The translations under genes and the position numbers were made by a program. From Pecten maximus (lineage: Eukaryota): 64,000 nt of DNA. The stretch lies in contig NC_047016.1 of the NCBI RefSeq assembly GCF_902652985.1, forward strand, positions 52,142,001-52,206,000, in the 5' to 3' direction. The notes beneath the pieces are model-generated. The model had not been told where the DNA came from. It worked only from the letters and a program-made list of their open reading frames with translations, and made no database searches. This document shows positions 1 through 40,311 of this stretch, in pieces; the first letter of the stretch is position 1; every line of letters starts with the position of its first letter.

Positions 1-989
1 ATAGAATTGATCGTGTTTTTCATTGTTGTGGTTTCAGTACTGACATCAGTTTCACTAAATAATGTTTCCCTACACTCTGCTAAAACTTTGGATGTAGACA
101 TACCTGTATTGTCCAGTGCAGCCATATTGGTGAGTTCAAGTCCTCAGAGTAAGATTTTCAAATCACAACAAAAGTTCATTTTCCCGGATAATTCCCGAAT
201 TTTTCCAGAATAATACCGAACAGGATGCTAATCCAGCACTTACACAGCATTTTCAACAGTTTATAATGTTAATGACCCTACATTTTAGATAAAAACCAGC
301 AAATTTCCTCTCCCAGATTTTTCATGTGTGTAGACACCTGGCTGAACACTACTCAGACTCAATAATACAATATATTAGAATTAACTAATAATGATCAAAT
401 TGTTAAATATCAATAATTATCAAATTAGTATTTATAAATAATTCGTTGAAATTGATATAAATTGATAATTCATTGAAATTAATATTTATTGATATCATAA
501 AATACCTTTTGATAATTCTCTCAATTTCATCAAACTAAAAATTATATCAAATACTTTGCTTTTTTCCTTAATACAAGTTATAATCAAAATGCTCTTTTTT
601 TCTCATTTGAACGCCTCTCTGATACCTGATATCTGATAACTGAAGATAATGATGTTGTTAAGTAAAAACCGCTCACTTTACTGAGATCTGTAAAAATGAT
701 GAGCTGTGTTAATGTAACCCACGCTACGGATGGCGTGACACTTGGATATTAAAACCGAAGCTACATGTACATGTATGTATCTATATAAACTTCAAAATTA
801 TCATCAGGACTTATCATTCCACTGTTTGCACTCATACCGTTATTACCATCTTTGGCTAATACTCAGTTAGAGTTTAACTTTATTAGGAATAGGTTATGAG
901 ACAGATGTACACATTCAACATCGGGACAGACTCTTCACCGTCTTCCCGGGGACCAACATCAAGGGATGCTTTTCCATTTAACCCAATGC

Positions 990-13520: not shown

Positions 13521-14898
13521 ATGGCGACGAAATCGAAGCTATATCCACTTGTGTCATTACCAAGACCAGCTTGGGCACTTTTTGACAGGTCAGGTAAGTC
13601 GACACATAATGTTGTAATATAGGCGACAAAGAAACGTCACAATACAATTACAACATAATGTTGTATATAGGCGACACAGAAACGTCACAGTAATTATATA
13701 TAATATTGAATTAATTGTAGAGAGTGACATTATTTCTTAAAAGGATGAACGTTCTATTTATTGTAAAACAATCATGTTTAGACACGTAACTCATGTAAAT
13801 ACAATTACAACATAATGTTGTAAACACGTGAAAAAGAAACGTCACAGTAATTATATCTACAAGGGCAAATATTGGATTAATGTAGAGAGTGACATTATTT
13901 CTTAAAGGGATGAATGTTCTATTTATTGTAAAACAATCATGTTTAGACACGTAACTCATGTAAATACAATTACAACATAATGTTGTATATAGGCGACAAA
14001 GAAACGTCACAGTAATTATATATAATATTGGATTAATTGTAGAGAGTGACATTATTTCTTAAAATGATGAACGTTCTATTTATTGTACAATAATCATGAT
14101 TGTTTAATACTTATCAATGTTTATGAAAGATTGTTGTTTTATTCAGGTCATCTGCCTATACATGGAGCTTTACAGTATACTGAGGATGGGCAAGCAGAGT
14201 TGTCGCAGCTGGAATTCCCAACAAATACTCTCAAACAAGCATTCGCTATAAGGGAAAAGACAAAATGTTCTCCAAAACTTCATCAAATCGGCTTTTGTCA
14301 GGATTGCAATATTTCAATGCACGTGTCTATTCCAAAGATTGGAAAAACGTCATATTCTATTTTTCATGACCTGTTCGATTCCGCCACAATGGAACGGATG
14401 TTACACATAGAAACAAAGCTAGTGAACATTGATCCTGAAACAAGGAGACCATCGCAACTTCCCTCTGCTTTTACTGAACAATACACCGATTTTAAGAGTG
14501 ACTATCCTGTCTTGATAACTGATGCTCAAGAAGATCTTGTCCTACCAACAAACGCCTTTAAAACATTGATTCGCACGAGGTATAGCGATACGGATCAAAA
14601 TTCGCATGTCAATTACTCAGAGTATTATAGATTCTGCGCAGACTGTGCTTCGGAAGCGTCTCGATCCGGGTACTATCGTCACTATGCCGACGACATTTGT
14701 CGGTTTCCTGTTCTCGAGACAGATGTTACATTTATTGGAGAATCCCCAGCATGTTCAAATTTGGACGTGTACACTTGGCAAGACAATGTTAACGTTCAGA
14801 TTATTAATTTTGCAATCTATCTAAAATCTGACAGGATATTTCAAGCACAGTTTTTGTATAGCTTTGAAAAATCACCCAGAATAAATTCAAGATTTTGA
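13521..14898 (+). CDS. Double-hotdog acyl-thioesterase-like protein, paralog 2 (coding exons 13521-13593, 14147-14898)
   Basis: Exon MATKSKLYPLVSLPRPAWALFDRS-G|gtaagt joins in phase 1 to attcag|GT CAT (GHLPIHG...). Motif RYSDTDQNSHVN. Ends in SRF. Confidence 0.88.
13600..14095. repeat. ~160-bp tandem repeat (~3 copies) filling the intron of thioesterase paralog 2
   Basis: AATACAATTACAACATAATGTTG...AGAGAGTGACATTATTTCTTAAA recurs at about 13641, 13798 and 13962. Confidence 0.9.
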
Positions 14899-21059: not shown

Positions 21060-23283
21060 ATGCAGTCGAAATTAGCCTCAGAACAACAGGTCGAGATGAT
21101 GGTGCCGCATTTAACTGCATCTTACTACGATAGAACAGGTAACAAAGTGAAAAAAACACATATAGATGCATAACACGTACCAACAGGTATCCTACAACGT
21201 TGTATATTTGAGCCCGTAACTAAGGAAGTCATATTGCTTGGATACGGAACCACAGATATAATTGAAATTCCATTTTTGTTATTCATATCCACCAATTATA
21301 ACATAATTTAACATTTAAGGTCACTTTTTCTAAAATCTATTTTTTTTTCACTTTCCACCTAATGCTCGATGCTTGCTGACATCCACTCTTAAGAATCTTC
21401 CCCTCGGATTGAGATTCCCCTGTCTCACCCCCAAAGGGGTGAAAGATTCTATTATTCTCTTACCCTGGACAGGGATATCTGCAGTTTTACCGGGGTGCGA
21501 TTTAGATTTTCTTATCTCACCCTAGGGAAAAGACAAGCTACACGTGATCTTTCAACGTGCTCTTGTTCTCGATAGGGTGACGTCACTATGACCTGACCCT
21601 GAACCTTTTATGGGGTCACACACATGCATATGTTCGTCGGCTTGTTTACCTGTGTGCATATTATTTGAGGAAGATTTAAAACATAGTTAAGTTCACAAAC
21701 ACAAGGCTTGCCTCGTGTTTGGGAATTTAGCAATCTCCCCCCTCGGGTTAAGATCCCCCTATCCCATCCCAAAAGGGGTGAAAGATCATATTAATTTATC
21801 ATGGGTCTGTTCCGTGGACAGGGATATCTCAACCCGAGTGTAAGAGTTTGGCCAGTCAGCACCAGGCTTGCCGAGTGCTGGCCAGCCAAACTCTTACACT
21901 CGGGTTGAGATATCCTTGTTCGCAGAACAGACCCATGATTGATTATTTTTCCCACATATATGCAACCAAACATAAGTTTTTATGAAAGGATTCCATCGGG
22001 CCGTCTTCCATGATCCTTGGAATGTGCGTCAACATTGATGACGTCATCATTTACGACTTTGTTACTCAACGTAAAATGATGACGTTACGTTATTGTGAGC
22101 AGCGTCATATAGAGCGCGTGCCTGCTGTGCTGTCTTTGCCCCCCCCCCCCCCCCCCCCCCCCCGTGTAAGATCGATTTATCTTTTCCCTAGCAACTGCCG
22201 GATAACCCTGTGAAGTATGGGAGAAAGATTTATCTCTGCCCTGTGTAATTTATATGTACACTATTTTTATACACTACTAACACAATGATCAATCACTCAC
22301 ACATAAAATAGCATGTGTCCTCCTTTTGTATGTGCAACGCACAAATACATGTCAAGGTGAAGGTTAAGTGCAATATGGCACGGGTTGATTTATATCAGAA
22401 TGGGAAATGTATTATTTTATGATTCTAATATCATCGAGTTAATTACATTACTTATAACAATTGTATTATTTTGAGAACTCATACTTAATATGAAATGCTA
22501 TATTTTTCATTTTCAGATCATTTTTCAGCTCATGGGATAATTTGTGTTTTAGCTGAGTATTTCATTGAAGCAGAAGCAATGGGGTTCTTTACTGCGAGAT
22601 TAGCACAGGAAAATATGAGAACGTTCACAGTTCAGGAGAATATAGTTTATTCTCCCAAATTACATCGGAAGGCTTCAAAGAAAAACGGAGATCTTCTACA
22701 TCGAGTCTTCTTTGCGTCTATTGGGCAAACCTCGTATGCTTTTACACAGGATCTGCTGGATCCGTCTTCAAAGGAACAACTTGTTCATCTCGAATCGAAA
22801 GTAGTAAACATTGATCCAGAGACACGGCGTCCATCAAAACTGCCATCATGGGTTACTGAACGATTTTCCAATTTTGAAAAAATTGACAAACCAATACTGT
22901 CTACGAGACAAGAGGACATCATCCCACCTCACGATGCTTTCAAAACAGTGACTCGCACTAGACCGAGCGATATGGATTCCAACTTCCACGTAAACTTTTC
23001 CGTATTTTACAGGTTCTGTACAGATTGTGCTACAGAAGCGTCTCTAGCGGGGCATTACCGTCACTTTAAAGACGACATGTGTTGGTTTCCTGTTCTGGAA
23101 ACTAAGGCTACGTTTCTTGGCGAAGCTCCAGCGAGTGTAATGCTGGATGTGTACAGCTGGCAGGACACTGATCATGAACAGAGGCTGTATTTTGCAATTT
23201 ATCGAAAAAATGAGAGGATATTTCAGGCATCCTTTCTTTACAGTTTAGTTAAGTCAACGCAACAGAGCATTTCAAAAATGTAA
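21060..23283 (+). CDS. Double-hotdog acyl-thioesterase-like protein, paralog 3 (coding exons 21060-21138, 22517-23283)
   Basis: MQSKLASEQQVEMMVPHLTASYYDRT-G|gtaaca joins in phase 1 to tttcag|AT CAT (DHFSAHG...). Same intron position as paralog 2. Motif RPSDMDSNFHVN. Ends in SKM. Confidence 0.88.
21390..22250. mobile_element. Intronic non-autonomous DNA element with a long hairpin (~21795-21947) and a duplicated ~60-bp block (possibly Crypton-like)
   Basis: ATCATGGGTCTGTTC...CTCAACCCGAGTGTAAGAGTTTGGC / GCCAAACTCTTACACTCGGGTTGAG...GAACAGACCCATGAT inverted arms around a GGCTTGCCGAG loop. The block CCCCTCGG.TT.AGAT.CCCCT..C.CA.CCC.AAAGGGGTGAAAGAT occurs at ~21400 and ~21740. Confidence 0.6.
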
Positions 23284-24601: not shown

Positions 24602-26890
24602 TCTCCCTCTTTTTGAGATGAACGAATCTAAGCTTAAGGTGACACCTTCAATAAATCAACCCATAAGTATTTAGCCATGTCCATAAGTATTTGACAAATA
24701 ACCTATGAATATATATCTAATCACACACTGGACATTATATAGCTACACCTTAGCTATTTAATAAAAATCATCATAAGGTTTTGGTTTGACAACCATTCTG
24801 CCTGAGCGCGTACTTACAGATGAAGGATTGTCACTGCACATGGGTTTGGATTGTATACGATCATGATCATAGTGTTCATCAGATGCCTCATTACTGTTCA
24901 AAATGTCTTCCTCCTCTTTTGACACGTTTGCCGAGTTCTTAGGTGGGATATCCTCATGAATAACACTGCGTGGCATAGACTGAAGTTTGTTCAAAAGTAC
25001 TGGACTTTTAACGTTGTTTGTTATATCAAAATTGTCTGTGGGCTGAGGCCCATGTCTTGATAAGAGTCAGTGTCTACGATTTCTTCAGTAAACACCTCGG
25101 TGTGTTCTGACACGATTTGACCGTCTTTTATGATTAGTCGCTTCCACTGTTCCTTTCAAGCTCCACAGTTTCTGGTTGTCTAGCTTAATTTTGACAATGT
25201 CTCCAGGCTCAAGTTTTGGTAAAGGACGGACAGCATTTCGGCGATCATATTGAGCTGTGTACCGTTCCTTATAGCTTTTGTCATGCCGCTCAATCCGTTT
25301 CTTACTTGGCCATTTAGGGTTCAGTGTTTTTGGTGCGGCCGGTACGGATGTCCTTATCTTTCGACCCATGAGAAGCTGACAAGGGCTAGCTCCCATCGAG
25401 GCGATAGGTGTTGCCCTATACCCCATCAGGGCAAGAAATTTATCGTCTTGCGCAAGTATTCGTTTTGCGATCTTCACTCCACTCTCCGCTTCTCCATTTG
25501 CTTGAGGGTAGTGTGGACTGGTAAAGGTCTGAATGAAGTTGTACTTCTCTGCGAACTTGTCAAATTCCTGTGAGGCAAATTGCGTGCCATTATCCGAAAC
25601 CAGTTCTTCCGGAACGCCGAATCGCGCAAATATGTTCTTTAGTTTGCCGATAACTTGACCACTAGTCTATGTTGGACAGATGTGCGATCTCCAAAAACCT
25701 CGAGTAGTAGTCCATAACCATGCCATGGTCGTTGAGGAAGCGGAGTAACTTTTAATGGTTCCTTTCATTGAGGAGGTTTGTGCTCCTGGCAGAAAGTACA
25801 CCGTTCCACCATTTCCTTAAGATCCTTCCCTATGTTGGGCCACCATACGCAAGTAGCTGCATGCTCGCGACACTTTGTAATACCCAGATGACCTTCATGG
25901 AGTGTTTCCAGGATCTCCCTCTGTAAACAGTTTGGTATCACAATCCTCTGTCTGTATAGGAGCAAACCATTAGATGTTGACAGTTCATTACGCACCGCAA
26001 AATAGCCTTCCATCTCCCGTATCGAGTATTCACGATCTGGCCACCCAGACTTAGTAGGAGTAAGGGCTTTAGCAAGTTGTGGGTCTTCTGTAGTAGCTTG
26101 ACGTATACGGGACAATTTGCGGTCTGATATCGGCCATGTCGATTCGACAGAGACCACAAACATTTCTACATCATCGTCAGAGGGAATCTCGCTTATCTCG
26201 AGGGGACTCCTTGACAGAGTATTAGGAACTACCAAAGATTTCCCTGGTACATGTTCTGCAATCGGAGTAAATCTCCTTAGGCGCATAAGCAATCATTGAC
26301 ATCTCAGTGGCTTTCTGTCAAGATCTTGAGTGTTTATGAGTGGCACTAAAGGCTTGTGATCAGTGAACAATTTAAATGACTCTAGTCCGACCAAATAACG
26401 TTTAAATTTCTCGCAGGCCCAGACGGATGCCAAACATTCCTTTTCAATTTGGGCGTACCTGGACTCAGCGGGAGTTAGTGTGCGAGAGCAGAATGCAACT
26501 GGCTTGACCTCATCTCCATCCTTTTGAAATAGTGCACCACCTAGACCGTAGCTGCTGGCATCAGCACCGACAAATGTAGGTTTGTTTGGAGAATAGAATG
26601 TCAAAGTAGGAGTACTTGTTAACTTCTCCTTTATCTCATTGAATGCTGTTTGCTGGTGTGGAGTCCACTGCCACACTACATCAGACTTCAAAATGTCCAT
26701 CATAGGACGTATGATTGTTGACAGGTCTGGAATGAACCTTCCCAGATAGTTTGTCATGCCAATGACTCTTCGTAGCTCGGTAAGGTCTCTTGGTGACTCG
26801 AGTCCTCTAATGGCTTCTAAGCGACTTGGGTTAACGCTTACGCCATCTCCACTAATCACGTGGCCAAAGTATTCAAGTTTGGATTTTCCA
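24406..26890 (-). mobile_element. Decayed, 5'-truncated Ty3/Gypsy LTR retrotransposon (RT end, RNase H, integrase, PPT, 3' LTR)
   Basis: RNase [10 protein letters not shown]...[10 protein letters not shown]...TDHKPL (26293-26859). Integrase zinc finger HEGHLG...WWP...C..C (25765-26292). Integrase core SDNG/PHYPQANGEAE/YRATP. PPT AAAAAGAGGGAGA at 24602-24614. Confidence 0.93.
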
Positions 26891-28164
26891 ATTGCTCATC
26901 ATAAGTAGTTATCTATTTCATTTTAGCACTTACTCCCTTCTTTTTATAAATTATCGGCATCCTAGACTCACTTTTACCGGCATCATGTAAAAACTAACGA
27001 TGTCAATATCAGCTTAAACTAATTACACCAATTATCGCCAACTCGTCGCTTCAGATTACATTTATATTTAAATTACTATCGATACGCTTACTCAGAATGC
27101 CATACAGAATTGAAAAAAACGCATTAATAATTCAGTTCATTTAGTACTCATCGTTTTCGCCCTCCGCCATATTGCATGCAGGCCATTACAGTTAATCGCA
27201 TCAGGTTCTCCACCGCGACCGTGGGAATAGAGAAAGTTTCTCTCGCAAATATTATCCAATATACAGTAATTCGTTCTGATTTGACGTGGGTTTAAATGAA
27301 CATACCATTTATATTATTATATGTTTTATTCATCTGTTAAAACATACAAAAAACACAATTCTAACTAAAAGTCGAAAATAGTTATATCTATCACAATGTG
27401 GATACATCGTTTTTCTCATTGAGCTATAATAAATGTTTCTTTAATCCACTGCATACATCCTGGCAAATGTTCTCTCCAAGTATGTGAACAGTGATCATGA
27501 CTGTTGATCGAAAACATTTCAGTAATAATTCGAAATATGCACTTATATATGAGGAATAACATTCAACGCTTGGAATGAATGATACACATGTAAAACACGT
27601 GTACACGAAACCTGACTTCCTACTGTATTAGAGTACATTTGGACGAAATGTCGCGCTACGTTATTGAGAGCTGACTTCACTAACTCGGCCTATTTGTGGT
27701 AGTTAGATGATATCAGCGGTCAGAACACCGACACTCGGCTATTGCAATCTTTACTTGACAAAGGAAATAGACGTTTTCGAAAGATCGCAAATGAAATTTT
27801 TAATTTTCTGTTTGCGTACAAAACTTATTTAGCTTTATACTTCATAATTAAATATATTTTTGCAAAGACATGTTACACTCCAAAGAAGAAAAAGGAAGGA
27901 TATCCTTTGATTGGTCCGTTAAAAAGCATTGTTATCTGATAGGGAATTAAGAAATATGGGGTCAAAGGGTAGAGTAATTTCAGAATGACAGAAATACCTA
28001 GGCATATCATTCGTATGCCTTTTGAAAATATCGTTATTTCCTTTTTTGAATCCTATATTGCAGATTCAGCAAGGTAGCACATCAAGTTCTGTATTTGTTT
28101 TGTTCCTATGTAATGTAGACTTATAACAATGACACCGATGATTGACATATAAATTCCAATTTAT

Positions 28165-29821
28165 TTAACCAATTACACCCATTGTTGTAGGTACTGTAGT
28201 GTGTCCGTGGTGGGGATGCGACACCACGAATACGTCCTGACCAGCACACATATGTTCTACATGCATACTTAGGTCATTAACATCGTCATGTGACATCTGT
28301 GTTTGGGTTCCCTTGGCTACGAGGAACATCAGATTACTCTGAAATAAAAACAGAAATGGAAAATGTCAACGAAACAGCATTTATAACTCAAAAAGATAAA
28401 AACTGCTTGAATAGAATATCGGTATAGGAGCCATAGAATTGAGGGAGAATAGAAATAAGACCAGAAGATCCGGAAGATATGCGTCCTCTGTTTCATCAAC
28501 GACAGTCGTCATGTAAAACAAAACCTTAATGACGATGTCAGGTCTAACTTATTACACAAGCTTATTCGTCACAACATATTAAACAGGAATTATTTCTTAA
28601 ACGAAAGATGAATGTCTTAACCTTTGATATCAATTAAAGATATTCTTTGTCAGGGGATGACGGTGTAATATATACATGTGGTATTTACCTCCATCTTCAG
28701 TAGTCCGTCTGTTGTGTGTACTTGGGGTCGCTGTGAAGCTTTCAGCTTCTCAATATAACATCTGCTTCCCAGCTTCATCACCATTTGATGCTGAAGAAGA
28801 TCCATTGCATATGATAGCGAATACTTGTTAAAAACTGATTTAATCATGCAATCAGTTTCCGTAGAATTGTGTATAAATAAAATTATTTCAGTAATACGTG
28901 TCAGAACGTATTCGAAATACGCCCCTTTATGTACAACAAATCTAGTGAGTATATTATCAGAAATCTTTACTTAATTGTAAGTAAACGAATCATATAGCAG
29001 AGCGCCACCTTTCTAATGTATTATTTATCTTATAATTTTTTATCATAAATTCCCATTATTATCAAAATTATGTCATGATAATGCTTGGGCGACATTTGAT
29101 TACATATCACAAAAATACGTTTTATCGAGATAGTTATCATATGTCAATATTATTGTAGTGGTAAGTGAAAATGCATTTTGCAAAATAGTGGTCTAATTTA
29201 TCGTGATCAATCGAGATAACTACCATTGTCTAAATCATCATAATAAATCAATTAAACATGATAATGTAAACTTAATGTATCGACTTGATAAACTAAATAT
29301 GCCATTTTAAATATCAGATTCATTTAAAACCTGGAACATACCGATTTGGCGTCATAGTAAAACAGGCCCTGGTCGAACTCGTTAGATTCGTGAACGTGAT
29401 GGCGATGAGTGGTGGGCGTGAAGGTTGTCATACCACATATCTGTAAACATTTAATGCCTTTTATCTTACAAATGGTACTGTTTCTATAATTCAAAAGTAC
29501 GCGAGTAATTAATATCTTCGTTGTAGAAATAGATTTATTGCTATTTCAGCCAAGCTGATATTGTGAAATAAAATGTTTGCAAATGAAAAATTTCATTAAA
29601 CACGTATACGACCTTTTGCAAAACCAGGTGATGAAACATTGCCAATGACATTGCCGTCTTACATATTCGTGTATGTGCCAAACAAACGTACATTTTGATA
29701 TATTTTTCCTAAGCTTGAAATTTCACAATATGCATGAAACACAAAAAATAAACAAAATAAAATAAATAAAACAACATACCTGCCCAAAAAGGCATACGGC
29801 CACAACTAACACACAGTACAT
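28165..29821 (-). CDS. Secreted His-rich BRICHOS-like protein A, 138 aa (exons 29821-29780, 29440-29342, 28790-28689, 28338-28165)
   Basis: All introns are GT-AG phase 0. MYCVLVVAVCLFGQ/ICGMTTFTPTTHRHHVHESNEFDQGLFYYDAKS/HQMVMKLGSRCYIEKLKASQRPQVHTTDGLLKME/SNLMFLVAKGTQTQMSHDDVNDLSMHVEHMCAGQDVFVVSHPHHGHTTVPTTMGVIG*. TATA-like at ~29893-29899. AATAAA overlaps the stop. The gene model is well supported by paralogy; the BRICHOS label is inference. Confidence 0.88.
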
Positions 29822-32383
29822 CTTGCTGAAAGGACGAAGTAAGGAAGATAAGATCGTTTCGTGACAAGAATGATCAAACTCTAAATACAGGTTATATATT
29901 GGAAGACACTGGGGCTCTTTAGGGGACTAGATTCATAATGTCTTGTTTCGTAAATACTGATAAGAAAGGTCAAATGTTGTTGAGACATTCTTTCTCCAAT
30001 TCTGATACACATAATGTTCTAATATTTCTAATCTAGATCTTACATCTTCAAATCTATATGTCTCCAGGCTTTTGATATGCTCTGCTTACCTGAATCATTA
30101 CTTATAAGTAATCATGTCTTAGCAACTTCAATGAAAATGTATTTCCCTTTAAGCCTAGAATTCATAATTCGTGAGGGATATCAACACGTACAAGCTTCTG
30201 TTTTCAAAAAAAAACAAAAATTGTAAATAAGTTAATCATAAGGATATTACTTTTTTGGTATGTTTCCTATTTAGATAAATATACGTTCAAACTATCCGAT
30301 ATGTGCTAATTTGGATTATGTTAATATTGTATCTAATATTTTTACGGAAATATTGAGGTGTAAATCCACCTGGGCAAACTTGTGTCCATATTTTCATCTG
30401 ATTCTACGTTATCGGATTTTCATGCTGCACTCTTAATTTCAGTGTAGCAATAAAACTTTGGGTCCACATGGCACAGTCAGAGTACTATTTATGAGAAAAC
30501 ATATAAAAAATGCTGGATTATTACAAATTACAATTTGACAAAGGCAAAAGGTTGAGTCAACATTTGGCTCTCACTTAATTCAATTTCTGTCATTTTTTAT
30601 CACCATTTGTAGATGCATAGTTAAAATTGAAGGACTAATAGCATCACCTTGGCGCACACTTTAAGACATCCATTTAAGACTTTCATTGGGTGTCAGACAA
30701 GGCTATCATTTCTGGCTATACTTAAATGTTTGGGGAAGATATATATCTACGTATGTAATATATCTTCATGTTTTGTGTGAAAAAATGGGTAAAGACATAA
30801 TGATAATCACATATGTATTATTTTTATTATAATGGATACTTCATTGTCTAGGTATACATGTACATGTTAATGGACATCAATGTTCATTTTACCACCATCT
30901 CAACCTTAAGTAGTTCTTCAGAAGATTATTACTTCTGCATATAACTGTTGATCTTGGAGTTGTTATGTAATAAACAAAATTAGAAAATATATCGGTATTT
31001 AAAATAAAAATCGATGACACAAAACTTCATGATTACGGGAAATTGTGCATTGGACACATTTGACATGTTAAAAACGTAATTTGCCGGTTTTATAATTTTC
31101 TCAAATTCATTTTGTAGAATAAATAGTCCTTCTCTATCAAACGTTTAAGTCACTCAGATGTCAACACTGCCAGACGACTAGCTATATAGGCCTACATGAA
31201 AGTCGAGATTTCAGTGATTCTAATTGTGTTTTAGTGATTATGTAATAAGTATACCATGGATGTCTGTGCAATAGCCCAGAATATTTGACCCTCGGTACTG
31301 GTAATCTTTACAATATTGGATACTTTTTAAATTTTGTCAGAAAAATGGCATGCTATTCTAATTAAATGTATCACAACACTTACTTCATGTATGTCAATAT
31401 GACATATTTGATATCAAAATAACAGTAATTATATACACTTCAAACGTTTATAATTGATTTCCACATACATATGTATAACATTAAATCGTAAGAATTATTA
31501 ACCATTGTGTAAGGATACCTCCTTCACTCAACTTGGTGTTATGCAAGGAGGTCCACTACGACTATCGATTGATACAATGATTAACCATTTACGCGATAAT
31601 CGTTTACTTTCATGTAACTAAATATTGTGAAAAAAATAAAGAATTTGAAGTGGGTGGCCGGCGCTAATCTGAAATCTCCATAGTCGTTGACCCCATATTT
31701 CAGATAATGTTTTAATGCAATTTCCAGTCTTTTGTTATCAAGTTAGATAAACGATTTTCCTTTATTTATTTTAAATTCAAGTTTACATTCACCAAAATGG
31801 GAAAGCTTTTTGTACAAAAATGGGCTGAGATAACACAGTTAACTGTTGTCTTGAATTAGGAACACTACAACTGGAACAGTCACCAAGTTCTTCGTTTGAC
31901 TTCATCATAGAGTACGTTTTTGTCACGATCTATGTTAAGGGAACCGACATATGGTATTCGTTACATCATCCAATGATATGTGAAAAAAGTTTTTTTAAAG
32001 ACATGCACCACTGGAATATCATACTGCAGTTTTTATCGGCAATGCAATTTATGATTTTTCAAGAAATGTAAGATAAAATATTGCGTTCATTATTTAGAAT
32101 ATTAAAATTTGATTCATAATTTAAAGACAAACTCAACACACATGCATATATAGACACACGATTCTGAACATATTGAACGAAGATATTTTAATTTAATCAA
32201 TTACAAACTTATCGACTGCCCCTCAAGTACCTAACCTCTACGTACTACACCTCTTATACAATTTTTGACCATCACTATCAGTTGTGAATTTCGTATAAAC
32301 TCCCCCTACTGTACCTTACTGCTCCATAGTATATATCTGGGTCATTACTGTGAAGACAGATTACGTAGCATTCCCTTACCAAG

Positions 32384-33848
32384 ATGTACTGTGCGGTGGC
32401 AGCCATAGCTTTGTGCCTGATTGGGCAGGTATGTTTCTTTCATGGCGATTAATTTTTGTTGTAAAACTTGTTATAATAAATATGCCTTCGGAAGCAGGTG
32501 CCATTCTTGACCACTTGCCATTACTTTATACTTATAATTGACGACGACAAGATTCTACTCTTGATTACTACATAGTATAACTCGTCATTTTGTTACAGGT
32601 CTATACCATGACAACAATACCTCCTAACCATTCACACAGTCCTCATGTCCACGAATCTAACGAGTTTGACCAGGCCTTGTTTTACTATGACGCTCTATCG
32701 GTAGGTATTATCATTCTGTCCGCGGACGAATATGTTAATTTCTATCAGATATCGCAAACATACTTAGTATCTTTGTTATTGGTTACCTATGGTCTTCAGG
32801 TGGAAATTTGAGCTGAACATATATATCACGTAATCTTTAAATGAAAATTAACTGCACAACATGACAACCAATGTTCTGTAGATTTAAAATCAATTAGAAT
32901 TGTTCTTCTATAGCCGAAAAAATAGATAGCCTTATTTCAAAGTTTAGATATGTGCATGAGTTATATTTTATACTTTCATTAATGTCAGATCGGTTATTAG
33001 AAGCTTTGATGACTTCCGTCTATGATTTAACATCCATCAGTTGATATCTCACATGTATCTCTACAGCATGAAATGGTCATGAAACGCGGGCAGCAGTGCT
33101 ATATAGAGAGAGTGAGAGGTTCCTACCGACCACAGGTACATACACCAGAAGGACTACTGAAGATGGAGGTAAGTACAGTTATCTATCACGTGGAGATGGA
33201 GGTAAGTACACATATCTGTCACGTGAAGATGGAGGTAAGTTCACATATCTGTCACGTGAAGATGGAGGTAAGTTCACATATCTGTCACGTGAAGATCGAG
33301 GTAAGTACACACATCTGTGACGTTAAGATGGAGGTAAGTACACATATCTGACACATGAAGATGGAGGTAAGTACACATATCTGTCACGTGAGGATGGAGG
33401 TAAGTACACACATCTATCACGTGAAGATGGAAGAAAGTACACACATCTATCACGTGAAAATGGAAATAAGTACACACATCTATCACGTGAAAATGAAAAG
33501 TAATTGCAGAGGTTTATAACGACAATGTTCAATCAGAAACGGCAAAAGTGGACAGGACAAGTAATAGTACAATAGGTGTATCGTTAACCCTGAGTGTAAT
33601 TATGCTTAGACACTGACTGCAATCAAAACTATAAAGTTGACTGAAAATCAAATCATAAGCATGTTTTTTTTTATTTCAAGGATAACCTCATGTTTCTCGT
33701 TGCCAAGGGAAACCACACACAGATGTCTCATGCTGATGTCAAGGCGTTAAGTGTGCACGTGGAAACCATGTGTGCGGGTCTTGATGTATTTGTTGTGTCG
33801 CCTAATCATTATCATCATCATACTACAACTATGAGCCCAATTGTTTGA
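32384..33848 (+). CDS. Secreted His-rich BRICHOS-like protein B, 138 aa (exons 32384-32428, 32599-32700, 33067-33168, 33681-33848)
   Basis: MYCAVAAIALCLIGQ/VYTMTTIPPNHSHSPHVHESNEFDQALFYYDALS/HEMVMKRGQQCYIERVRGSYRPQVHTPEGLLKME/DNLMFLVAKGNHTQMSHADVKALSVHVETMCAGLDVFVVSPNHYHHHTTTMSPIV*. Phase-0 GT-AG introns at the same positions as A and C. AATAAA at the stop. Confidence 0.88.
33159..33500 (+). repeat. 33-bp tandem repeat of the exon-3 end plus splice donor (GAAGATGGAG|GTAAGTACACATATCTGTCACGT), ~10 copies
   Basis: GTAAGT donors at 33169, 33202, 33235, 33268, 33301, 33334, 33367 and 33400. Later copies have lost the GT. Confidence 0.95.
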
Positions 33849-34109
33849 ATAAAATTATGTGTAATTTAAAATTGTCTCCTCTTATCTTTCTCTGATCAAA
33901 ATGAATATATACAATGTGTATGGAGGCATGTTTTTTCCCTTAAAGGCTTATCGATACTGAAAGGATCATTCGGGACAATGAATGATAGTATAAGGAATTT
34001 ATAATTAACTGACCAACATTAAAGATATGAGATATGTAAAAATATTTACACGCACGTATACAGTATAAAATTATAATAGGCTATTGTTAGTCATATCCAG
34101 TGGTACAGA

Positions 34110-34520
34110 CTAAAAGCTGGTGTGTTTTGGGAGGCTGTGTCATATTTGTGTTAAGTCTCCTTGTGATAGGCCGGAGATGTTACCGATTTATAGTGCTACC
34201 TCACTGAAGCATACTGCCGAAGACACCCAGCAGGACACCCCTACCAGTCACATTATACTGGAAACGGGCAAACCAGCCGTCCCACTCCTAATATGCTGAG
34301 CGCTAAGCAGGAGTTGCAACTACCATTTTAAAAGACTTGGCCAGGAGACAGAACCCAAAACCTTCCTCAAAGGGGCGAACGCTCAACTAAAGTGAGGCAT
34401 TGTCAAGGGAGATATTAGGAAGAAGAAAGTAAATAAAGAATAGAAAAGATAAGATCCCAACTTTAGTCGCCTCTTACGATCATGAAATTGAGGCAGCAGA
34501 TACAATTCTTGCGCCCTACC
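34110..34520 (-). mobile_element. SINE (Meta-domain-like) followed by a second SINE-like tail
   Basis: TTTATAGTGCTACCTCACTGAAGCA...CAGTCACATTATACTG...GCTGAGCGCTAAGCAGGA...ACTACCATTTT resembles recalled bivalve Meta-SINE sequence in reverse orientation. Confidence 0.55.
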
Positions 34521-34764
34521 CTAGAATATTTTTAATGAGACCATAATGTCTTCCAAATAGCCACTCCATGGCCTAAAATCGTTACGGATGGATTCCTCTT
34601 TCATAATATCGCTATCATGGTCGGTGACAATATTTACAAATGGCATATTGGTAAAGTGTGATGCTCTACTAAACCAGCGGGATTTGAAGGGGGCTGACCC
34701 AAAGTGTATCTTAACAATCTGTTGATCGAGTACCAATTAGAAATGGAAAAATGCTGACTTCCTT

Positions 34765-36175
34765 CTTAGGTAATTCACACCATATCTCATTTAGAGATGT
34801 CGAAACCTTCATGGATAATTTGACCACTCGTTTAGAGATGTTGACACTTTATGGATAATTTGACCACTCATTCAGAGATGTTAACACCTTTCGAGGGTAA
34901 TTTGACCACCCATTTAGAAATGATAACACCTCTCGTGGGTAATTTGCACCACTAATTTAGGGATGTTGACAGCTCTCGAGGGTAATTTGATCACCCATTT
35001 AGAAATGTTAACACCTTTCGTGGATAATTTGCACCACTACTTTAGGGATGTTGACACCTTTCGTGGGTAATTTGACCACTCATTAAGAGATGTTAACACC
35101 TTTCGTGGATAATTTCCAAGACTCATTTAGAGATGTTAACACCTTTCGGGGGTAATTTGCATCACTAATTTAGGAATGTTGACACCTTTCGTGGGTAATT
35201 TGACCACTCATTTAGAAATGTTAACATCTTTCGTGGGTAATTTGACCACTCATTTAGAGATGTTAACACCTTTCGGGGGTAATTTGCACCACTCATTAAG
35301 AAATGTTAACACCTTTCGGGGGTAATTTGCACCACTAATTTAGGAATGTTGACACCTTTCGTGGGTAATTTGACCACTCATTTAGAGATGTTACATGTAA
35401 CACCTTTCGTGGGTAATTTGACCACTCATTTAGGGATGTTGACACCTTTCGTGGGTAATTTGACCACTCATTTAGAAATGTTGACATCTTTCGTGGGTAA
35501 TTTGGCCACTAATTTAGGGATGTTGACACCTTTCGTGGGTAATTTCCACAACTCATTTAGGGATGTTGAGCACATTTCGTGGGTAATTTGACCACTCATT
35601 TAGATATGTTAACACCTTTCGTGGGTAATTTGACCACTCATTTAGAAATGTTGACACCTTTCATGAATGACTTACACCACTAATTTAGAGATGTTGACAC
35701 CTTTCGTGGATAATTTGCACTACTCATTTAGAGATGTTAACACCTTTCGTGGGTAATTTGACCACTCATTTAGAGATGTTAACAGATGTTAACACCTTTC
35801 GTGGGTAATTTGACCGCTCATTTAGAGATGTTAACACCTTTCGTGGGTAATTTGACCACTCATTTAGAGATGTTAACACCTTTCGTGGGTAATTTGACCA
35901 CTCATTGAGAGATGTTACTTGTAACACCTTTCGTGGGTAATTTGACCACTCATTGAGAGATGTTACTTGTAACACCTTTCGTGGGTAATTTGACCACTCA
36001 TTTAGAGATGTTAACACCTTTCGTGGGTAATTTGACCACTCATTTAGAGATGTTAACACCTTTCGTGGGTAATTTGACCACTCATTTAGAGATGTTAACA
36101 CCTTTCGTGGGTAATTTGACCACTCATTTAGGGATGTTAACACCTTTCGTGTGTAATTTGCATCACCTCGCATTT
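34765..36175. repeat. 42-bp minisatellite (TTTAGAGATGTTAACACCTTTCGTGGGTAATTTGACCACTCA), ~33 copies
   Basis: Directly visible. It produces the 14-aa periodic ORFs (MLTPFVGNLTTHLE). Confidence 0.97.
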
Positions 36176-37884
36176 AGACAATTTGCGACAGAAGAACAAA
36201 ATGATGAACAATTTATGAAAAAAGCTGCCTATCTTTCAAACGTTTGGGTATTCGATAAAAGGTCACTAAGGTTCGGCACATTGATTACTTACTAATGTGT
36301 CAAAATAGATGAAATTGCTTCATTAGGCTGCTTAATCAATTAACACGTATTTGTTGTGTTTGTGCAATCTGCGATAAAAATGACGATTTCAGATTTCAAA
36401 TTTACTAGTAAAATTTTGCAATTTTGACATGTTCAATACCATCATCTGTTATATTTAATTTACAAAAATGATTAAAGGGTGGTTTTCAAAAATGACTCGT
36501 CGTTTGTTTTGAGTTTAATTTGGTGGTGTGTTGCCTCTAACGTTGTAACAAACAATTGAACAAGTACAACTTATTTGCATTATCAGCTGGGGTTGTTATG
36601 TCGCATAAAAGTAACACCCACCAGAAAAAAGTAGGTTTTTTTCGAAAAAGAGAAATTCTGCTATCTGAGATAAACTATCTTAAGAGTGCTTGGGTGCTGC
36701 ATGCACAATATATTTGACCTGGTAAAGATTATAATATGAATTATTGATAAAAGAACGAAATATTAAAATGCTATTTGGGCTACAGATTTAAAATTGCGAT
36801 GCCATGACCCTATTGTTTAATTGCCAATATCCATGATTATATGGAAAACTAACAAAAAATGTTTGTTTTCAGTTTTAACCAAATAAGTTACCGAGCAACG
36901 TGTATGGTCTTTGAATATATATTAGAGTTAAGAAATGGGACTCATTGCGAGTGGGCTTTGGGGGAAGGGATCTTTGATTAATGATCATGAATATTGCATT
37001 TCCCGGTCATCGATGCCTATCTTTTGTATTCTTTCATTGTTGATACATGTAAAATGTACATTTGGTACACTACTAAGTATACTTGAACTAATTACGTAAA
37101 TAATTGTGCACTTGCGGTGTCACAATTGTATGATATTAATAAATTACCTTTAACAACATTTAATGTCAATTGTTGTTTCCCCTCTTCAGCTTCAGTTTCT
37201 GAACGGATTATCAATCTGCTGTATAAATTAATCTGTTGATATCCTGTAACTAATGCTGGTTTGGTTTATTAATGCAGTTAATCTAATAACACACACTTAT
37301 CAACTCAAAACAGACACACTTGATGTCCCGAATTGGTGATACATGAGCGACACCTTAAGAATACAACAGATGTCGTGAAATTCTGAGTAGGCGTTAGCTC
37401 TTGTAATGTAAGCAATGATAATACTGTTACATGTGTTTCAATGATGCCAACAATTTCTATGTGTCCTGTAATGCAATGCCTGTATATGTTTTTTTTAAAA
37501 AAGCTTGCATTTCTAATGTGAACAATACTTAACGATTTTATATGATAAATATAATTGCTTAACAATCAAAATGATATTACTGTCCTTGTTAACCGTGAAT
37601 GCTTTATACATATCTCAACGTTAGTTAATAAGATTCCAAGTTTATACGTATAATTAAAAAAAGAAGGAAAGGCACAGTTATTCAAAATATAGCCAGAAGT
37701 TGCAGAATTACGGAATTAAAAAAAAAATTGTTATCTTCACATCTATTATAGAAGTTCACATGTTTCCCTTAAATGTGCCTCTCCTCCTTATCTCTGATCC
37801 ATATATAGAGGTGGACACCGATACACGTTTGTGGACTTCATTTTCAGAGCGTTCTCGACCTACTTCCCTGAAAGACAATCCAAC

Positions 37885-39793
37885 ATGCAGGGCGTTTTAG
37901 TTGTCGCTCTCTGTCTTATTGCACAGGTGATGTATATGTTTATTAATGAACAATCACATTGATAATACTTTAAACTCTAACTTACATTTTAAATATTTTA
38001 TATAAATAAACTTGAAATTGAAAAGACAACAGATTGATTATGAAATAAAGGTGGTGGGACTTTACTGGAGTACAGTTAATCAATTATCTGCTCAGCCAGC
38101 TGATATTCCACTTTACATATACTTTTGTCTCTCTTCACATTAAAATATGATGTTTAATGATATTAAATGCATTTTTACAGATATACGCCGAAACAACCAC
38201 CCACAAGCCTCACCACAATCATCAACACGAGGCTAATGAATTAGACCCTGCCCTCTTCTACTACGATGGCGCAACCGTAGGTGATCGATATCAAACGCCA
38301 TATTTTATATTAAAACATAAGTTTCTCAGACTAATTAGATCGTAAAACAATATAAAATGTTAAAATGGTTTGACTTCCAAATCATCAGAATGTTCTCTTT
38401 TTATTTCGTGAATAAAAAAGTTGTCTGATCACAAATAAATAAAGAACAAACGATAAAATTCATTTGCGGGAGATCTTGGTATATCAAAAAAATACTGATT
38501 TGATGTCTTTAATGGTGTAGGTAGATAAATCAAATATGAATTTTGGTTATATGATAAATATATCGATTTTACTGTATGGAATCTACCACTCTAAATTTAA
38601 CATTTACATAAGTGTGTTTTGTCAGATGCGTATGTTCCTATGCATTCTACTTTACTCGAAAAACAGTTCAAAGACGTAAAGTTCAGACAAATAGGATGAA
38701 TAGAACAGTTTTAAAATTGACGGCACTGCTTGGAGTAAACAAACATCAGTATTAACGTCAAGCGAACGAGTTAAGAATAGACAGGTTACGTGATACATTG
38801 CTATCACAAGATAAGAAAAGTCACGATGTGATACGAATGTGAGGAATGCGTTCACATAGACTGTCTAGAACAATGACCGATTATTATGACTGGGAGAAAT
38901 GGCGTTTTTAACACTAAAATAGTAAAGCTTGCAATAAACTAAAAATGCATTCAAACTGATGAGGCTAAGATAAATGTTCTAGGCGGGAATTTCGGAAACG
39001 TAACAGAGTAGCTGGTGATGCAATGAAACTGACAGTTTAGTAGTTTAATGGCACGAGATGACAATGAATAATAGTATAGATACAAAGTTTAGATAATATG
39101 ATTTATAAAACTAGACAATGGATATAGTTCATAGGGATCTCTTGTGGCTAGGAATTACGAAATAGAGATACAAAACAAGAAAAAAAATACAGATATAAAG
39201 TTTTAATAAGAGAATATAATAAATGTAAGCAATACTTCTTACAACCAAAACAATAATTATCATTCATTTAATTAATGTAATTGTTTTTATTCTTCTGAAT
39301 TGATCACATTACAGTGTACAGTATATTTATTTACTGGCAACACACGTATTGTAGTGGTATTCTATTTTAGCGGTTTTGCAGTGCGGTATATAATGACTGC
39401 ATCAATACCAGTTTCTGTATTTAGGTTCCTATGGTAAACACTGTGAATGCGACAATTCATAACTGAACTCTTTGCTATTTTAATGTAGTTGTGCTCTAAA
39501 TTTCGAGTCCTCAAAAATAAGAAAATTTGCAGACTTAGATATATTACACCAGAATTGTTTAAATGCATATTGATAGAATACATATAATTATGCATGTATG
39601 TTTAATTTTCTTACAGCACCGCCTGGTGATGAAGCTGGGTAACAACTGTTACATAGAAAGGATTACGTCACATCATGGCGTAGATGTTCACACTGAGGAC
39701 GGCCTCCGAACTGCCGAGGTAACAAATAAATATAGCATCTTACATGTGGGATATATCAAATAGTAGGGTAGATATGATGTATGTGTGTAACAT

Positions 39794-39824
<31 letters not shown>

Positions 39825-40311
39825 GGGGGGGACATATATAAGAAAGTAAAGACGTTAGGTATGGAAATGCACTCTCTGCTCTTTTTAGGTACACATATTA
39901 GGCTAGGTTTTAATTACCTCAATACATTTTGCTAATAATACTGATGACATTACAGCATATGAAAATGAAAATCATGCCATTCCAATCACATATATGTTTT
40001 TTTTCGCAGCAATACGTTTTATTCTACTATACTACATTTATATTGTAATATGATATTTCAGAACCAAATTTAATAACACTCTATCGAGGTGTTGATTGTT
40101 TAAAACAGACAGAACTCAATAAACGGTTTGTTATTTTTTTCAGACAAAACTGATGTTGTTGGTCTCCAAAGGAACAAAGACGCCCATGTCTCATGATCAG
40201 GTGAACACGTTAAGTCAACATGTAGAGCACATGTGCTCAGGCGCGTCTGTCTACACTGTATCTGCTACTCATCACCATCATCATACAACAACAATGGGTC
40301 CTCAAATTTAA
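37885..40311 (+). CDS. Secreted His-rich BRICHOS-like protein C, 135 aa (exons 37885-37926, 38181-38276, 39617-39718, 40144-40311)
   Basis: MQGVLVVALCLIAQ/IYAETTTHKPHHNHQHEANELDPALFYYDGAT/HRLVMKLGNNCYIERITSHHGVDVHTEDGLRTAE/TKLMLLVSKGTKTPMSHDQVNTLSQHVEHMCSGASVYTVSATHHHHHTTTMGPQI*. TATA-like at ~37802. AATAAA at ~40332. Confidence 0.88.

What the first reader, a model, noticed from the sequence alone, without database searches (positions are those of the whole stretch)
28165..40311. Cluster of three secreted, stand-alone BRICHOS-like proteins with His-rich arms, invisible in the ORF track
Seen: three intact 4-exon paralogs (135-138 aa) with identical phase-0 intron positions, a hydrophobic signal peptide, and the invariant core HExNExDxxLFYYD-x3-H-x2-VMK-x-G-x2-CYIE...VHTxxGL...LM.LV.KG...MSH..V..LS.HVE.MC.G..V. 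Established: BRICHOS domains have a conserved Asp at the end of a beta-strand, a 'CYI' cysteine, and a second cysteine in an 'L-x3-I-x2-LC-x-G-x2-hydrophobic' motif. They normally sit in larger precursors (proSP-C, ITM2/Bri2, gastrokines, arenicin) and chaperone a beta-prone C-terminal client peptide. Inference: these are miniaturised client-less BRICHOS-like proteins secreted as free extracellular anti-aggregation or assembly chaperones, for example for mucus, byssus or shell matrix proteins or in defence. The family is tandemly expanded, which makes it a candidate undescribed system.
Basis: partly seen in the sequence, partly recalled or inferred. Interest (0 to 1): 0.9.

Follow-up and report, generated by a model that had tools for sequence, protein, structure and literature searches.

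The report
Scallop mini BRICHOS proteins, histidine tails
Three neighbouring king-scallop genes encode small secreted proteins made of little more than a stripped-down BRICHOS chaperone domain with histidine-rich ends. The family is real and expressed, found only in scallops, and nobody has described it, and what it does has not been tested.

Summary
The window carries three intact four-exon genes: A on the minus strand (28165-29821), B (32384-33848) and C (37885-40311) on the plus strand. All introns are GT..AG, phase 0, at the same positions. The products are 138, 138 and 135 aa. RNA contigs from four studies show every junction of A and B exactly as modelled. The joined exons are letter-identical to three Pecten maximus RefSeq 'uncharacterized proteins'.

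The BRICHOS reading is supported by three methods.
- Pfam PF04089 is the only recurring hit, in 12 of 14 family members. Gene A scores 25.6 bits against a cut-off of 25.
- Two AlphaFold models have proSP-C BRICHOS (2YAD) as top match. It is the only chain of 48,161 with Z of 5 or more (6.1).
- The nearest named ESM Atlas cluster is gastrokine-1.

The Asp and the two Cys are invariant. There is no convertase site and no hairpin 'client' peptide, only a conserved His4-Thr3 tail.

The family has 14 members, all in scallops, in three old orthogroups under purifying selection. A homodimer is predicted (0.65, best control 0.00). Chaperone activity, metal or pH switching, tissue and partners are inferred, not shown.

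Verdict: a new variant of a known kind, of moderate interest.

The parts
29780..29821 (-). Gene A exon 1: start codon and most of the signal peptide (14 aa)
   Evidence: The junction 29781|29441 is seen in RNA contigs of runs X5 and X6. The 5' UTR reaches at least 29871.
29342..29440 (-). Gene A exon 2: end of signal peptide, His/Thr-rich N arm, NEFD..FYYD strand with the conserved Asp
   Evidence: The joint 28790|29342 is present in 4 runs.
28689..28790 (-). Gene A exon 3: two beta strands with the first conserved Cys (CYIE), a loop, and the start of helix 1
   Evidence: This exon alone gives Pfam BRICHOS E 0.17. The joint 28338|28689 is present in 4 runs.
28165..28338 (-). Gene A exon 4: helix 1, strand, helix 2 with the second conserved Cys, last strand, His/Thr tail, stop
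   Evidence: RNA contigs run through to 28100.
32384..32428 (+). Gene B exon 1: start codon and signal peptide (15 aa)
   Evidence: The joint to exon 2 is present in X5 and X7. A cDNA-adaptor-like loose end at 32363 marks a likely mRNA 5' end.
32599..32700 (+). Gene B exon 2: N arm and the Asp-bearing strand
   Evidence: The joint to exon 3 is present in 4 runs.
33067..33168 (+). Gene B exon 3: strands with the first Cys, a loop, and the start of helix 1
   Evidence: The joint 33166-8|33679-81 is present in 4 runs.
33681..33848 (+). Gene B exon 4: helices, second Cys, last strand, His/Thr tail, stop
37885..37926 (+). Gene C exon 1: start codon and signal peptide
   Evidence: The joined model is identical to P0014 / XP_033733257.1. 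No reads were laid on it.
38181..38276 (+). Gene C exon 2: N arm (5 His in 15 residues) and the Asp-bearing strand
39617..39718 (+). Gene C exon 3: strands with the first Cys, and a loop
40144..40311 (+). Gene C exon 4: helices, second Cys, last strand, His5-Thr3 tail, stop
29822..32383 (.). 2.56-kb head-to-head spacer between the start codons of genes A and B, holding both promoters. A shared or bidirectional control region is inferred only.
   Evidence: The 5' ends of the RNA contigs lie at about 29871 (A) and 32363 (B).

Best explanation
The three genes encode a scallop-specific subfamily of the BRICHOS superfamily. Each product has four parts: a cleavable signal peptide; a 13-18-residue His/Thr-rich N arm; a minimal BRICHOS core of about 85 residues (three strands, helix 1, strand, helix 2, strand); and a 15-17-residue tail with a conserved His run followed by (S/T)TT. 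The core carries the family's one Asp and two Cys. Shown here: the genes are spliced and transcribed, conserved under purifying selection, and best matched by BRICHOS in sequence, fold and language-model features. Inferred: with no convertase site and no hairpin-forming propeptide, the domain is not an intramolecular chaperone of its own precursor. It would be secreted as a free, probably dimeric, ATP-independent binding module that captures beta-prone or hydrophobic stretches of other secreted proteins in trans, as shed Bri2 BRICHOS and gastrokines are thought to do. The 13-17 histidines move the calculated net charge from about +10 at pH 5 to about -4 at pH 8. The arms could therefore couple binding or release, or metal coordination, to the passage from an acidic secretory compartment to sea-water-like pH. 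My odds are about 0.9 that it is a secreted BRICHOS-domain family and about 0.4 for the trans-chaperone mechanism with a pH or metal switch.
For: Gene structure and RNA. Identity to RefSeq models.

Pfam BRICHOS PF04089 is the only recurrent family. It hits 12 of 14 members at E<0.1, always aligning profile positions about 21-90 to residues about 52-118. Gene A scores 25.6 bits (cut-off 25, E 1.5e-5), gene B 18.8 bits and gene C 14.3 bits. One member carries a precomputed PF04089 tag.

Two AlphaFold2 models (B with 9 sequences, A with 14) have core pLDDT 73-90 and the same topology. Foldseek ranks the six 2YAD chains first for both models (prob 0.84-0.99, TM by target 0.56-0.62). VIA-align gives Z 6.3 / 2.7 A / 68 residues. 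In the unbiased scan of 48,161 chains, 2YAD is the only one with Z>=5 (6.1; next unrelated 4.4).

In the ESM Atlas, a GKN1 BRICHOS cluster scores 0.92 with 200 shared features, 16 of 30 hits are BRICHOS, and ITM2 and SP-C models reach TM 0.50-0.51.

The Asp and both Cys are invariant in 14 of 14 members. In the 13 members with a signal peptide they are the only Cys outside it, and the isoform without one has only these two. dN/dS between A and B is 0.16 with dS 1.3. Three orthogroups are shared by three scallop genera. The homodimer score is 0.65 against a best control of 0.00, with runs agreeing in at least 94% of contacts and partner pLDDT at least 78. That mark was reached by 21 of 30 solved homodimers and 0 of 23 solved single chains.

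The family's defining features and the trans activities of BRICHOS are taken from PMC10182729, PMC9714404 and PMC9627735.
Against: Only one of the three window proteins reaches Pfam's own cut-off, and only just. Foldseek E-values are 0.04-0.3, and Z near 6 is in the range the tool calls 'middling'. No sequence hit to any solved BRICHOS chain was found. Cys-Cys distance could not be measured. No activity, tissue, partner, metal binding or oligomer state has been measured. The tails are disordered in the models. The dimer pass comes from a model without an alignment, calibrated mostly on microbes, and may reflect memory of BRICHOS oligomers. His-rich segments could serve quite different ends, such as metal buffering or material cross-linking.
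Confidence: 0.55

Rival explanations
1. Extracellular metal-binding or metal-buffering proteins. The His runs (11-14% His) bind Zn, Cu, Ni or Cd in haemolymph, mucus or digestive fluid, and the BRICHOS fold is only a soluble scaffold.
For: Each mature protein has 13-17 His. The tail keeps a His cluster before (S/T)TT in 14 of 14 members (four or more His in about 11, two in the most divergent pair). The N arm is His-rich in about 11 of 14, and several core His are invariant. The predicted dimer brings the two N arms next to the two-fold axis. From general knowledge, bivalve plasma histidine-rich glycoproteins carry metals.
Against: No metal-binding fold or motif was matched. BRICHOS domains are not known as metal proteins. 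The best-conserved residues are the BRICHOS core and the first strand, not only the His. Purifying selection acts on the core (dN/dS 0.14).
Confidence: 0.15
2. Pro-proteins in the style of the polychaete BRICHOS antimicrobial precursors (arenicin, nicomicin). The BRICHOS domain would escort a terminal His/Thr peptide that is released and is the active product.
For: BRICHOS-AMP precursors exist in marine lophotrochozoans (PMC9756803). The C tail is strongly conserved. From general knowledge, His-rich peptides can be antimicrobial at low pH or with zinc.
Against: The Pecten proteins have no furin or dibasic site between the last strand and the tail. The tail is only 15-17 residues, has no Cys, is not cationic at neutral pH and is not a hairpin. 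The family is far shorter than the roughly 200-240-residue AMP precursors (PMC6265681 abstract).
Confidence: 0.1
3. Building blocks or cross-linkers of a secreted material (byssus, periostracum or shell matrix) that harden through His-metal bonds when pH rises on secretion.
For: The calculated charge reverses between pH 5 and 8. His runs sit at both ends, which is a bivalent geometry, and a dimer is predicted. From general knowledge, mussel byssal proteins use His-metal cross-links.
Against: There are no repeats and no Gly/Ala/DOPA-type material motifs. The protein is small and globular. No hit came from BRICHOS plus shell, byssus or mantle literature searches. The tissue of expression is unknown.
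Confidence: 0.1
4. Not BRICHOS at all: an unrelated small alpha/beta protein whose resemblance is chance or convergence.
For: 11 of the 12 Pfam hits are below the cut-off. Foldseek E>0.01 and Z is about 6. No PDB sequence hit was found.
Against: Three different methods independently put BRICHOS first. The three residues that define the domain are invariant and sit on the expected elements. The alignment to 2YAD, 38..122 against 97..197, places the Asp and the second Cys at the offsets expected from proSP-C numbering (the residue numbers of proSP-C are from my own knowledge).
Confidence: 0.07

Closest known systems
Gastrokines (GKN1/2/3), vertebrate secreted BRICHOS proteins
   Same: Both have a signal peptide followed directly by a BRICHOS domain, with no transmembrane anchor, and are secreted as small soluble proteins. 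A GKN1 cluster is the nearest named ESM Atlas cluster (0.92).
   Different: Gastrokines are longer. As the superfamily is described in PMC10182729, they keep a C-terminal beta-prone region. They have no His-rich arms and occur in vertebrates. No direct sequence relationship to them was shown here.
proSP-C BRICHOS domain (PDB 2YAD)
   Same: It is the best structural match for both models (Z 6.1-6.3, rmsd 2.7 A, 65-68 residues). Both share the sheet flanked by two helices, the Asp at the end of a strand, and Cys in a strand and at helix 2. Both also lack the extra N-terminal strands of other BRICHOS domains (PMC9714404).
   Different: proSP-C is a type II membrane protein whose client is its own poly-Val transmembrane helix. 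The scallop proteins are 18-23% identical to it, have a strand between the helices where proSP-C is disordered, and have no membrane segment after signal cleavage.
Bri2/ITM2B BRICHOS, shed into the extracellular space
   Same: It is a free extracellular BRICHOS domain acting in trans on foreign clients, with activity governed by oligomer state (PMC10182729). An ITM2 cluster matches by structure with TM 0.51.
   Different: Bri2 BRICHOS is cut out of a 266-residue membrane precursor that carries a furin-released 23-residue client. The scallop proteins are made free from the start.
BRICHOS antimicrobial-peptide precursors of polychaetes (arenicin, alvinellacin, capitellacin, nicomicin)
   Same: They are marine lophotrochozoan, secreted, single-BRICHOS proteins and form multigene families.
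   Different: They carry a cleavable cationic Cys-rich beta-hairpin at the C-terminus. The scallop tails are uncleaved by sequence, Cys-free and His/Thr-rich.

Membership tests
BRICHOS domain (Pfam PF04089) | Sequence match to the family profile at or above the curated cut-off (25 bits) | tested here: inconclusive
   Gene A reaches 25.6 bits (E 1.5e-5) and passes. Gene B reaches 18.8 bits and gene C 14.3 bits, and both fail. In all, 12 of 14 family members hit only this family, in the same register, and 2 have no hit. A full-length profile-profile test could not be run.
BRICHOS domain (Pfam PF04089) | [quoted passage not shown] | tested here: met
   Two AlphaFold2 models show five strands and two helices. 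2YAD is the top Foldseek hit for both. It is also the only chain with Z>=5 among 48,161 (Z 6.1). This is moderate, not overwhelming, strength.
BRICHOS domain (Pfam PF04089) | Conserved Asp at the end of a beta-strand | tested here: met
   The Asp of FYYD is invariant in 14 of 14. It is the last residue of strand 40-44 in model A and of strand 42-46 in model B.
BRICHOS domain (Pfam PF04089) | Two conserved Cys forming a disulfide between a sheet strand and helix 2 | tested here: inconclusive
   Both Cys are invariant, 54 residues apart, and the only Cys outside the signal peptide. One lies in strand 57-62 and the other directly follows helix 106-111.
BRICHOS pro-protein architecture | N-terminal signal peptide or type II membrane anchor | tested here: met
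   The N-terminus is hydrophobic and 14-15 residues long, with a small-residue cleavage pattern, in 13 of 14 members. The exception is an alternative isoform. This rests on a hydrophobicity calculation only.
BRICHOS pro-protein architecture | An aggregation-prone client region, usually a C-terminal hairpin after a convertase site (PMC10182729, PMC9714404) | tested here: not met
   Only 15-17 residues follow the last strand. That stretch has no dibasic site in the Pecten proteins, no Cys, contains Pro, and is disordered in the models. This is the respect in which the family departs from all described BRICHOS proteins.
BRICHOS-AMP precursors | Cleavable cationic Cys-rich beta-hairpin peptide at the C-terminus | tested here: not met
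   See the rival explanation.
Gastrokine family | Orthology or significant sequence similarity to GKN1-3 | not tested
   Only the ESM Atlas feature similarity is available (0.92). No gastrokine sequence with a usable reference was at hand.

The most novel reading that the evidence does not exclude
This is the first natural BRICHOS domain that has shed its client. It would be a dimeric, free-standing extracellular chaperone whose two histidine-rich arms act as a built-in pH or metal switch, conserved since before the genera sampled here diverged to handle a secreted scallop-specific material or cargo.
Probability: 0.3. Interest if true: 0.65.

Novelty: new variant of a known kind. Interest (0 to 1): 0.45.

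Why it matters
Reviews of the BRICHOS superfamily state that every member carries, besides the domain, an aggregation-prone region that the domain chaperones (PMC10182729). A conserved, expressed family consisting of the bare domain plus two short His/Thr arms would be a natural counter-example. It would also be a natural 'minimal BRICHOS' of about 85 residues. That is useful for asking which parts of the domain suffice for anti-amyloid activity, a property being developed for therapy. The His arms offer a testable pH or metal control of a chaperone. For scallop biology it adds three transcribed, lineage-restricted secreted proteins to look for in mucus, haemolymph, byssus or shell. If the proteins prove inert in aggregation assays, the finding shrinks to an ordinary lineage-specific small secreted protein family.

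Tried and rejected
- Pfam on single exons gave nothing except BRICHOS at E 0.17 for exon 3 of gene A. The exons are too short for this.
The exon-4 peptides were searched by reference. The full-length searches then used database proteins returned by those searches. A script showed three of them (P0012, P0007, P0014) to be letter-identical to the joined exons.
- Sequence searches of the PDB with the family profile and with P0012 gave only His-tag-driven or chance hits (2LBB, MrpR/YopR) and no BRICHOS chain.
- Two long hits of the exon-4 profile are repeat artefacts, not multi-BRICHOS proteins: P0005 is a yeast flocculin-repeat protein and P0006 a repetitive Mytilus protein.
- Profile searches at E up to 10 found no member outside Pectinidae. 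The exhaustive HMMER scan used exon 4 only, so distant relatives can have been missed. The ESM Atlas lists unnamed molluscan clusters of 127-150 aa that look alike, and I could not fetch them.
Clustering elsewhere rests only on consecutive LOC numbers and shared contigs.
- Literature searches by LOC and XP accession numbers found no paper on these proteins. Searches for BRICHOS with scallop, bivalve, mantle or byssus, and for histidine-rich with scallop, found none either.
- Depth figures of the RNA contigs were not used to rank expression, as the tool advises.
- The tissues of the runs are coded and remain unknown.
Full report
**What is there.** The window is AT-rich animal DNA (GC about 0.34) from a 918-Mb, 3,983-contig assembly. 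Reading the small ORFs of 28-40.5 kb and the flanking bases gives three genes of four exons each. Coordinates are listed under 'parts'. All nine introns begin GT and end AG after a pyrimidine tract, all are phase 0, and they fall at the same places in the three proteins. The products are 138 (A, minus strand), 138 (B) and 135 aa (C). A and B lie head to head, with 2.56 kb between their start codons. C lies 4 kb beyond B, past a 42-bp minisatellite.

**Are the genes real?** Logan contigs of four runs from four studies were laid on 28100-33900. Single contigs join 28338 to 28689 and 28790 to 29342 in all four runs, and 29441 to 29781 in two runs. For gene B they join 32425-8 to 32596-9, 32699-700 to 33066-7 and 33166-8 to 33679-81. 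Allowing for the stated ambiguity of 1-5 bases, these are exactly the modelled junctions. The introns are bare of contigs apart from a repeat. One run is an RNA library by its record and the others are guessed to be RNA, but unspliced DNA cannot give these joints. It rests on canonical sites and on conservation.

I did not send a joined model to any search tool. The exon-4 peptides were aligned and searched by reference. The database proteins those searches and their follow-ups returned include three that a script found letter-identical to the joined exons: P0012 = A, P0007 = B and P0014 = C. These are XP_033733255.1, XP_033759335.1 and XP_033733257.1, all 'uncharacterized protein' of Pecten maximus. 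All later full-length work used those ids. The genome holds only these three copies.

**The family.** An exhaustive HMMER scan of 1.84 billion representatives with the exon-4 profile was run, followed by three word-indexed searches (the last at E up to 10). Together they find 14 proteins, all from Pectinidae: Pecten 3, Argopecten irradians 3, Ylistrum balloti 3 and Mizuhopecten yessoensis 5. All are unnamed. Within each species their locus numbers are consecutive or nearly so, and they share a contig, which suggests the same clustering elsewhere.

A maximum-likelihood tree splits the family into a C-type clade and an A/B-type clade (both 100/100). Within the A/B clade there are A-type (87/91) and B-type (81/90) groups, each with one gene from Pecten, Argopecten and Ylistrum. 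The trio therefore predates the split of these genera and is not a recent expansion. Between A and B, dN/dS is 0.16 with dS about 1.3. Comparisons with C are saturated.

**Is it BRICHOS?** Three independent kinds of evidence agree.
- *Sequence.* Pfam PF04089 is the only family that recurs. It hits 12 of 14 members, always aligning profile positions about 21-90 (7-90 in two members) to residues about 52-118. Gene A scores 25.6 bits against a cut-off of 25 (E 1.5e-5). Gene B scores 18.8 bits and gene C 14.3 bits.
- *Fold.* AlphaFold2 models of B (9-sequence alignment) and A (14 sequences) have mean pLDDT 70-72 and core blocks of 73-90. They share one topology: three strands, a long helix, a strand, a short broken helix and a last strand. 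Foldseek puts the six chains of 2YAD, the proSP-C BRICHOS crystal structure, first for both models (probability 0.84-0.99, TM by target 0.56-0.62, E 0.04-0.3). VIA-align gives Z 6.3, rmsd 2.7 A over 68 residues. In a scan that does not lean on Foldseek, 2YAD is the only one of 48,161 representative chains with Z of 5 or more (6.1). The next unrelated chain is at 4.4.
- *Language-model features.* The nearest named ESM Atlas cluster is GKN1, in which 91% of members carry PF04089 (score 0.92, 200 of 256 features). Sixteen of 30 hits are BRICHOS, and the Atlas's own model matches ITM2 and SP-C clusters at TM 0.50-0.51.

The three residues that reviews call the only highly conserved ones, one Asp and two Cys (PMC10182729), are invariant in all 14 members. 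They sit where they should. The Asp is at the end of the first modelled strand, one Cys is in the third strand, and the other directly follows helix 2. In the 13 members with a signal peptide, no other Cys lies outside it. The one isoform without a signal peptide has only these two Cys. I could not measure the Cys-Cys distance, so the disulfide is inferred.

No sequence search hit a solved BRICHOS chain. Each line of evidence is modest on its own. Together I put membership at about 0.9.

**How it differs from known BRICHOS proteins.** Described members have a membrane anchor or signal peptide, a linker, the domain, and a beta-prone region that the domain chaperones. That region is usually a C-terminal hairpin freed at a convertase site, and proSP-C with its N-terminal client is the only stated exception (PMC10182729, PMC9714404). 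Here only 15-17 residues follow the last strand: a His cluster, (S/T)TT, then a few hydrophobic residues with a Pro or Gly. In the Pecten proteins this stretch has no dibasic site, it has no Cys, and it is disordered in the models.

The N arm is 13-18 residues of Thr, Pro and His and is also disordered. The domain itself is short, about residues 38-122. Like proSP-C, it lacks the extra N-terminal strands of other BRICHOS domains. Unlike proSP-C, it has the strand between the two helices. 'Miniaturised and client-less' is therefore a fair description of the sequence.

The C-terminal His cluster followed by (S/T)TT is present in all 14 members, with four or more His in about 11. The His-rich N arm is present in about 11 of 14. 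Mature proteins contain 13-17 His (10.7-14.4%) and have pI 6.3-6.5. Their calculated charge runs from about +10 to +13 at pH 5 to about -4 to -5 at pH 8. B-type orthologues share an N-H-T sequon.

**Oligomer.** ESMFold2 folding of two copies of mature A scored 0.65 in all three runs, against 0.00 for the best of three controls. The runs agreed in at least 94% of contacts, and partner pLDDT was at least 78. That mark was reached by 21 of 30 proteins solved as homodimers and 0 of 23 solved as single chains. The calibration is mostly microbial, and a pass may be memory of known BRICHOS oligomers.

The interface is an antiparallel pairing of residues 31-45 of the two chains, centred on residue 39, backed by helix 1. 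It covers the NEFD..FYYD stretch, which is the most conserved part outside the canonical core (invariant N, E, D, F, Y, D). That would explain why this stretch is conserved. It supports binding but does not show it.

**Most likely mechanism.** Shown: these are secreted-type, expressed, conserved BRICHOS-fold proteins without a client. Inferred: they work in trans, as free and probably dimeric ATP-independent binders of beta-prone or hydrophobic segments of other secreted proteins. All BRICHOS domains studied so far modulate amyloid formation by foreign substrates, and Bri2 BRICHOS does so after being shed (PMC10182729). The His arms would make binding, release or self-assembly depend on pH or on Zn, Cu or Ni.

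I give this about 0.4. Metal buffering, release of the tails as peptides, and a role as a cross-linkable material component are the live alternatives. The tissue and partners are unknown, because the run records are coded and no paper mentions these genes.

**Novelty.** All three genes are annotated but unnamed, and one carries an automatic Pfam tag. Searches by the proteins' accession numbers and for BRICHOS together with scallop or bivalve found no paper on these proteins or on small BRICHOS proteins in bivalves. One Mytilus paper lists an unnamed 'BRICHOS domain-containing protein' among toxin-responsive transcripts. A review states that BRICHOS AMPs are known only from polychaetes. This is a new subfamily and a new architecture within a known superfamily, not a new kind of system.

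**Surroundings.** Upstream lie three thioesterase-like single-exon ORFs; one tested ORF hits 4HBT_2 at E 1e-8. There is also an LTR-retroelement pol fragment at 25765-26859. A 33-bp tandem repeat copies the end of gene B's exon 3 together with its donor site ten times. The RNA contigs use only the first donor.

Noticed in passing
window 33158-33495: A 33-bp tandem repeat (10.2 copies, 90% matches) starts in the last 11 bases of gene B exon 3 and repeats its GTAAGT donor in frame. All four RNA runs join only the first donor to exon 4. Short contigs inside the repeat are ambiguous, because repeated words are counted many times.
   Followed up: partly
window 34786-36160: A 42-bp minisatellite of about 32 copies lies between genes B and C. 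It is open in several frames only because it is repetitive.
   Followed up: no
window 25765-26859 (-): A fragment of an LTR-retroelement pol gene lies 1.3 kb beyond the 3' end of gene A, with an RNase H domain (E 4e-34) and an integrase zinc-binding domain (E 4e-16). It was observed only.
   Followed up: partly
window 31147-31267: A short patch between genes A and B is covered by contigs with loose ends on both sides in all four runs. It looks like a transcribed dispersed repeat rather than part of either gene.
   Followed up: no
window 32363: One cDNA contig of gene B ends here in a template-switch-adaptor-like loose sequence. The mRNA probably starts about 21 bases before the ATG.
   Followed up: no
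window 39804-39831: An uninterrupted run of 28 G lies in intron 3 of gene C.
   Followed up: no
window 55023-55736 (+): A 237-aa ORF with a signal-peptide-like start and several N-x-S/T sequons has no Pfam match. It lies just after the N gap at 54377-54876.
   Followed up: partly
G000:C14:9192506-9192613 and G000:C7:24701633-24701782: Two other exon-sized sub-threshold matches to Pfam BRICHOS lie elsewhere in the genome (23 and 20.7 bits). They are probably canonical BRICHOS genes.
   Followed up: no
window 4821-5645, 14083-14898, 22495-23283 (+): Three paralogous ORFs of 262-274 aa lie upstream. The third matches the thioesterase-like superfamily 4HBT_2 (E 1e-8).
   Followed up: partly
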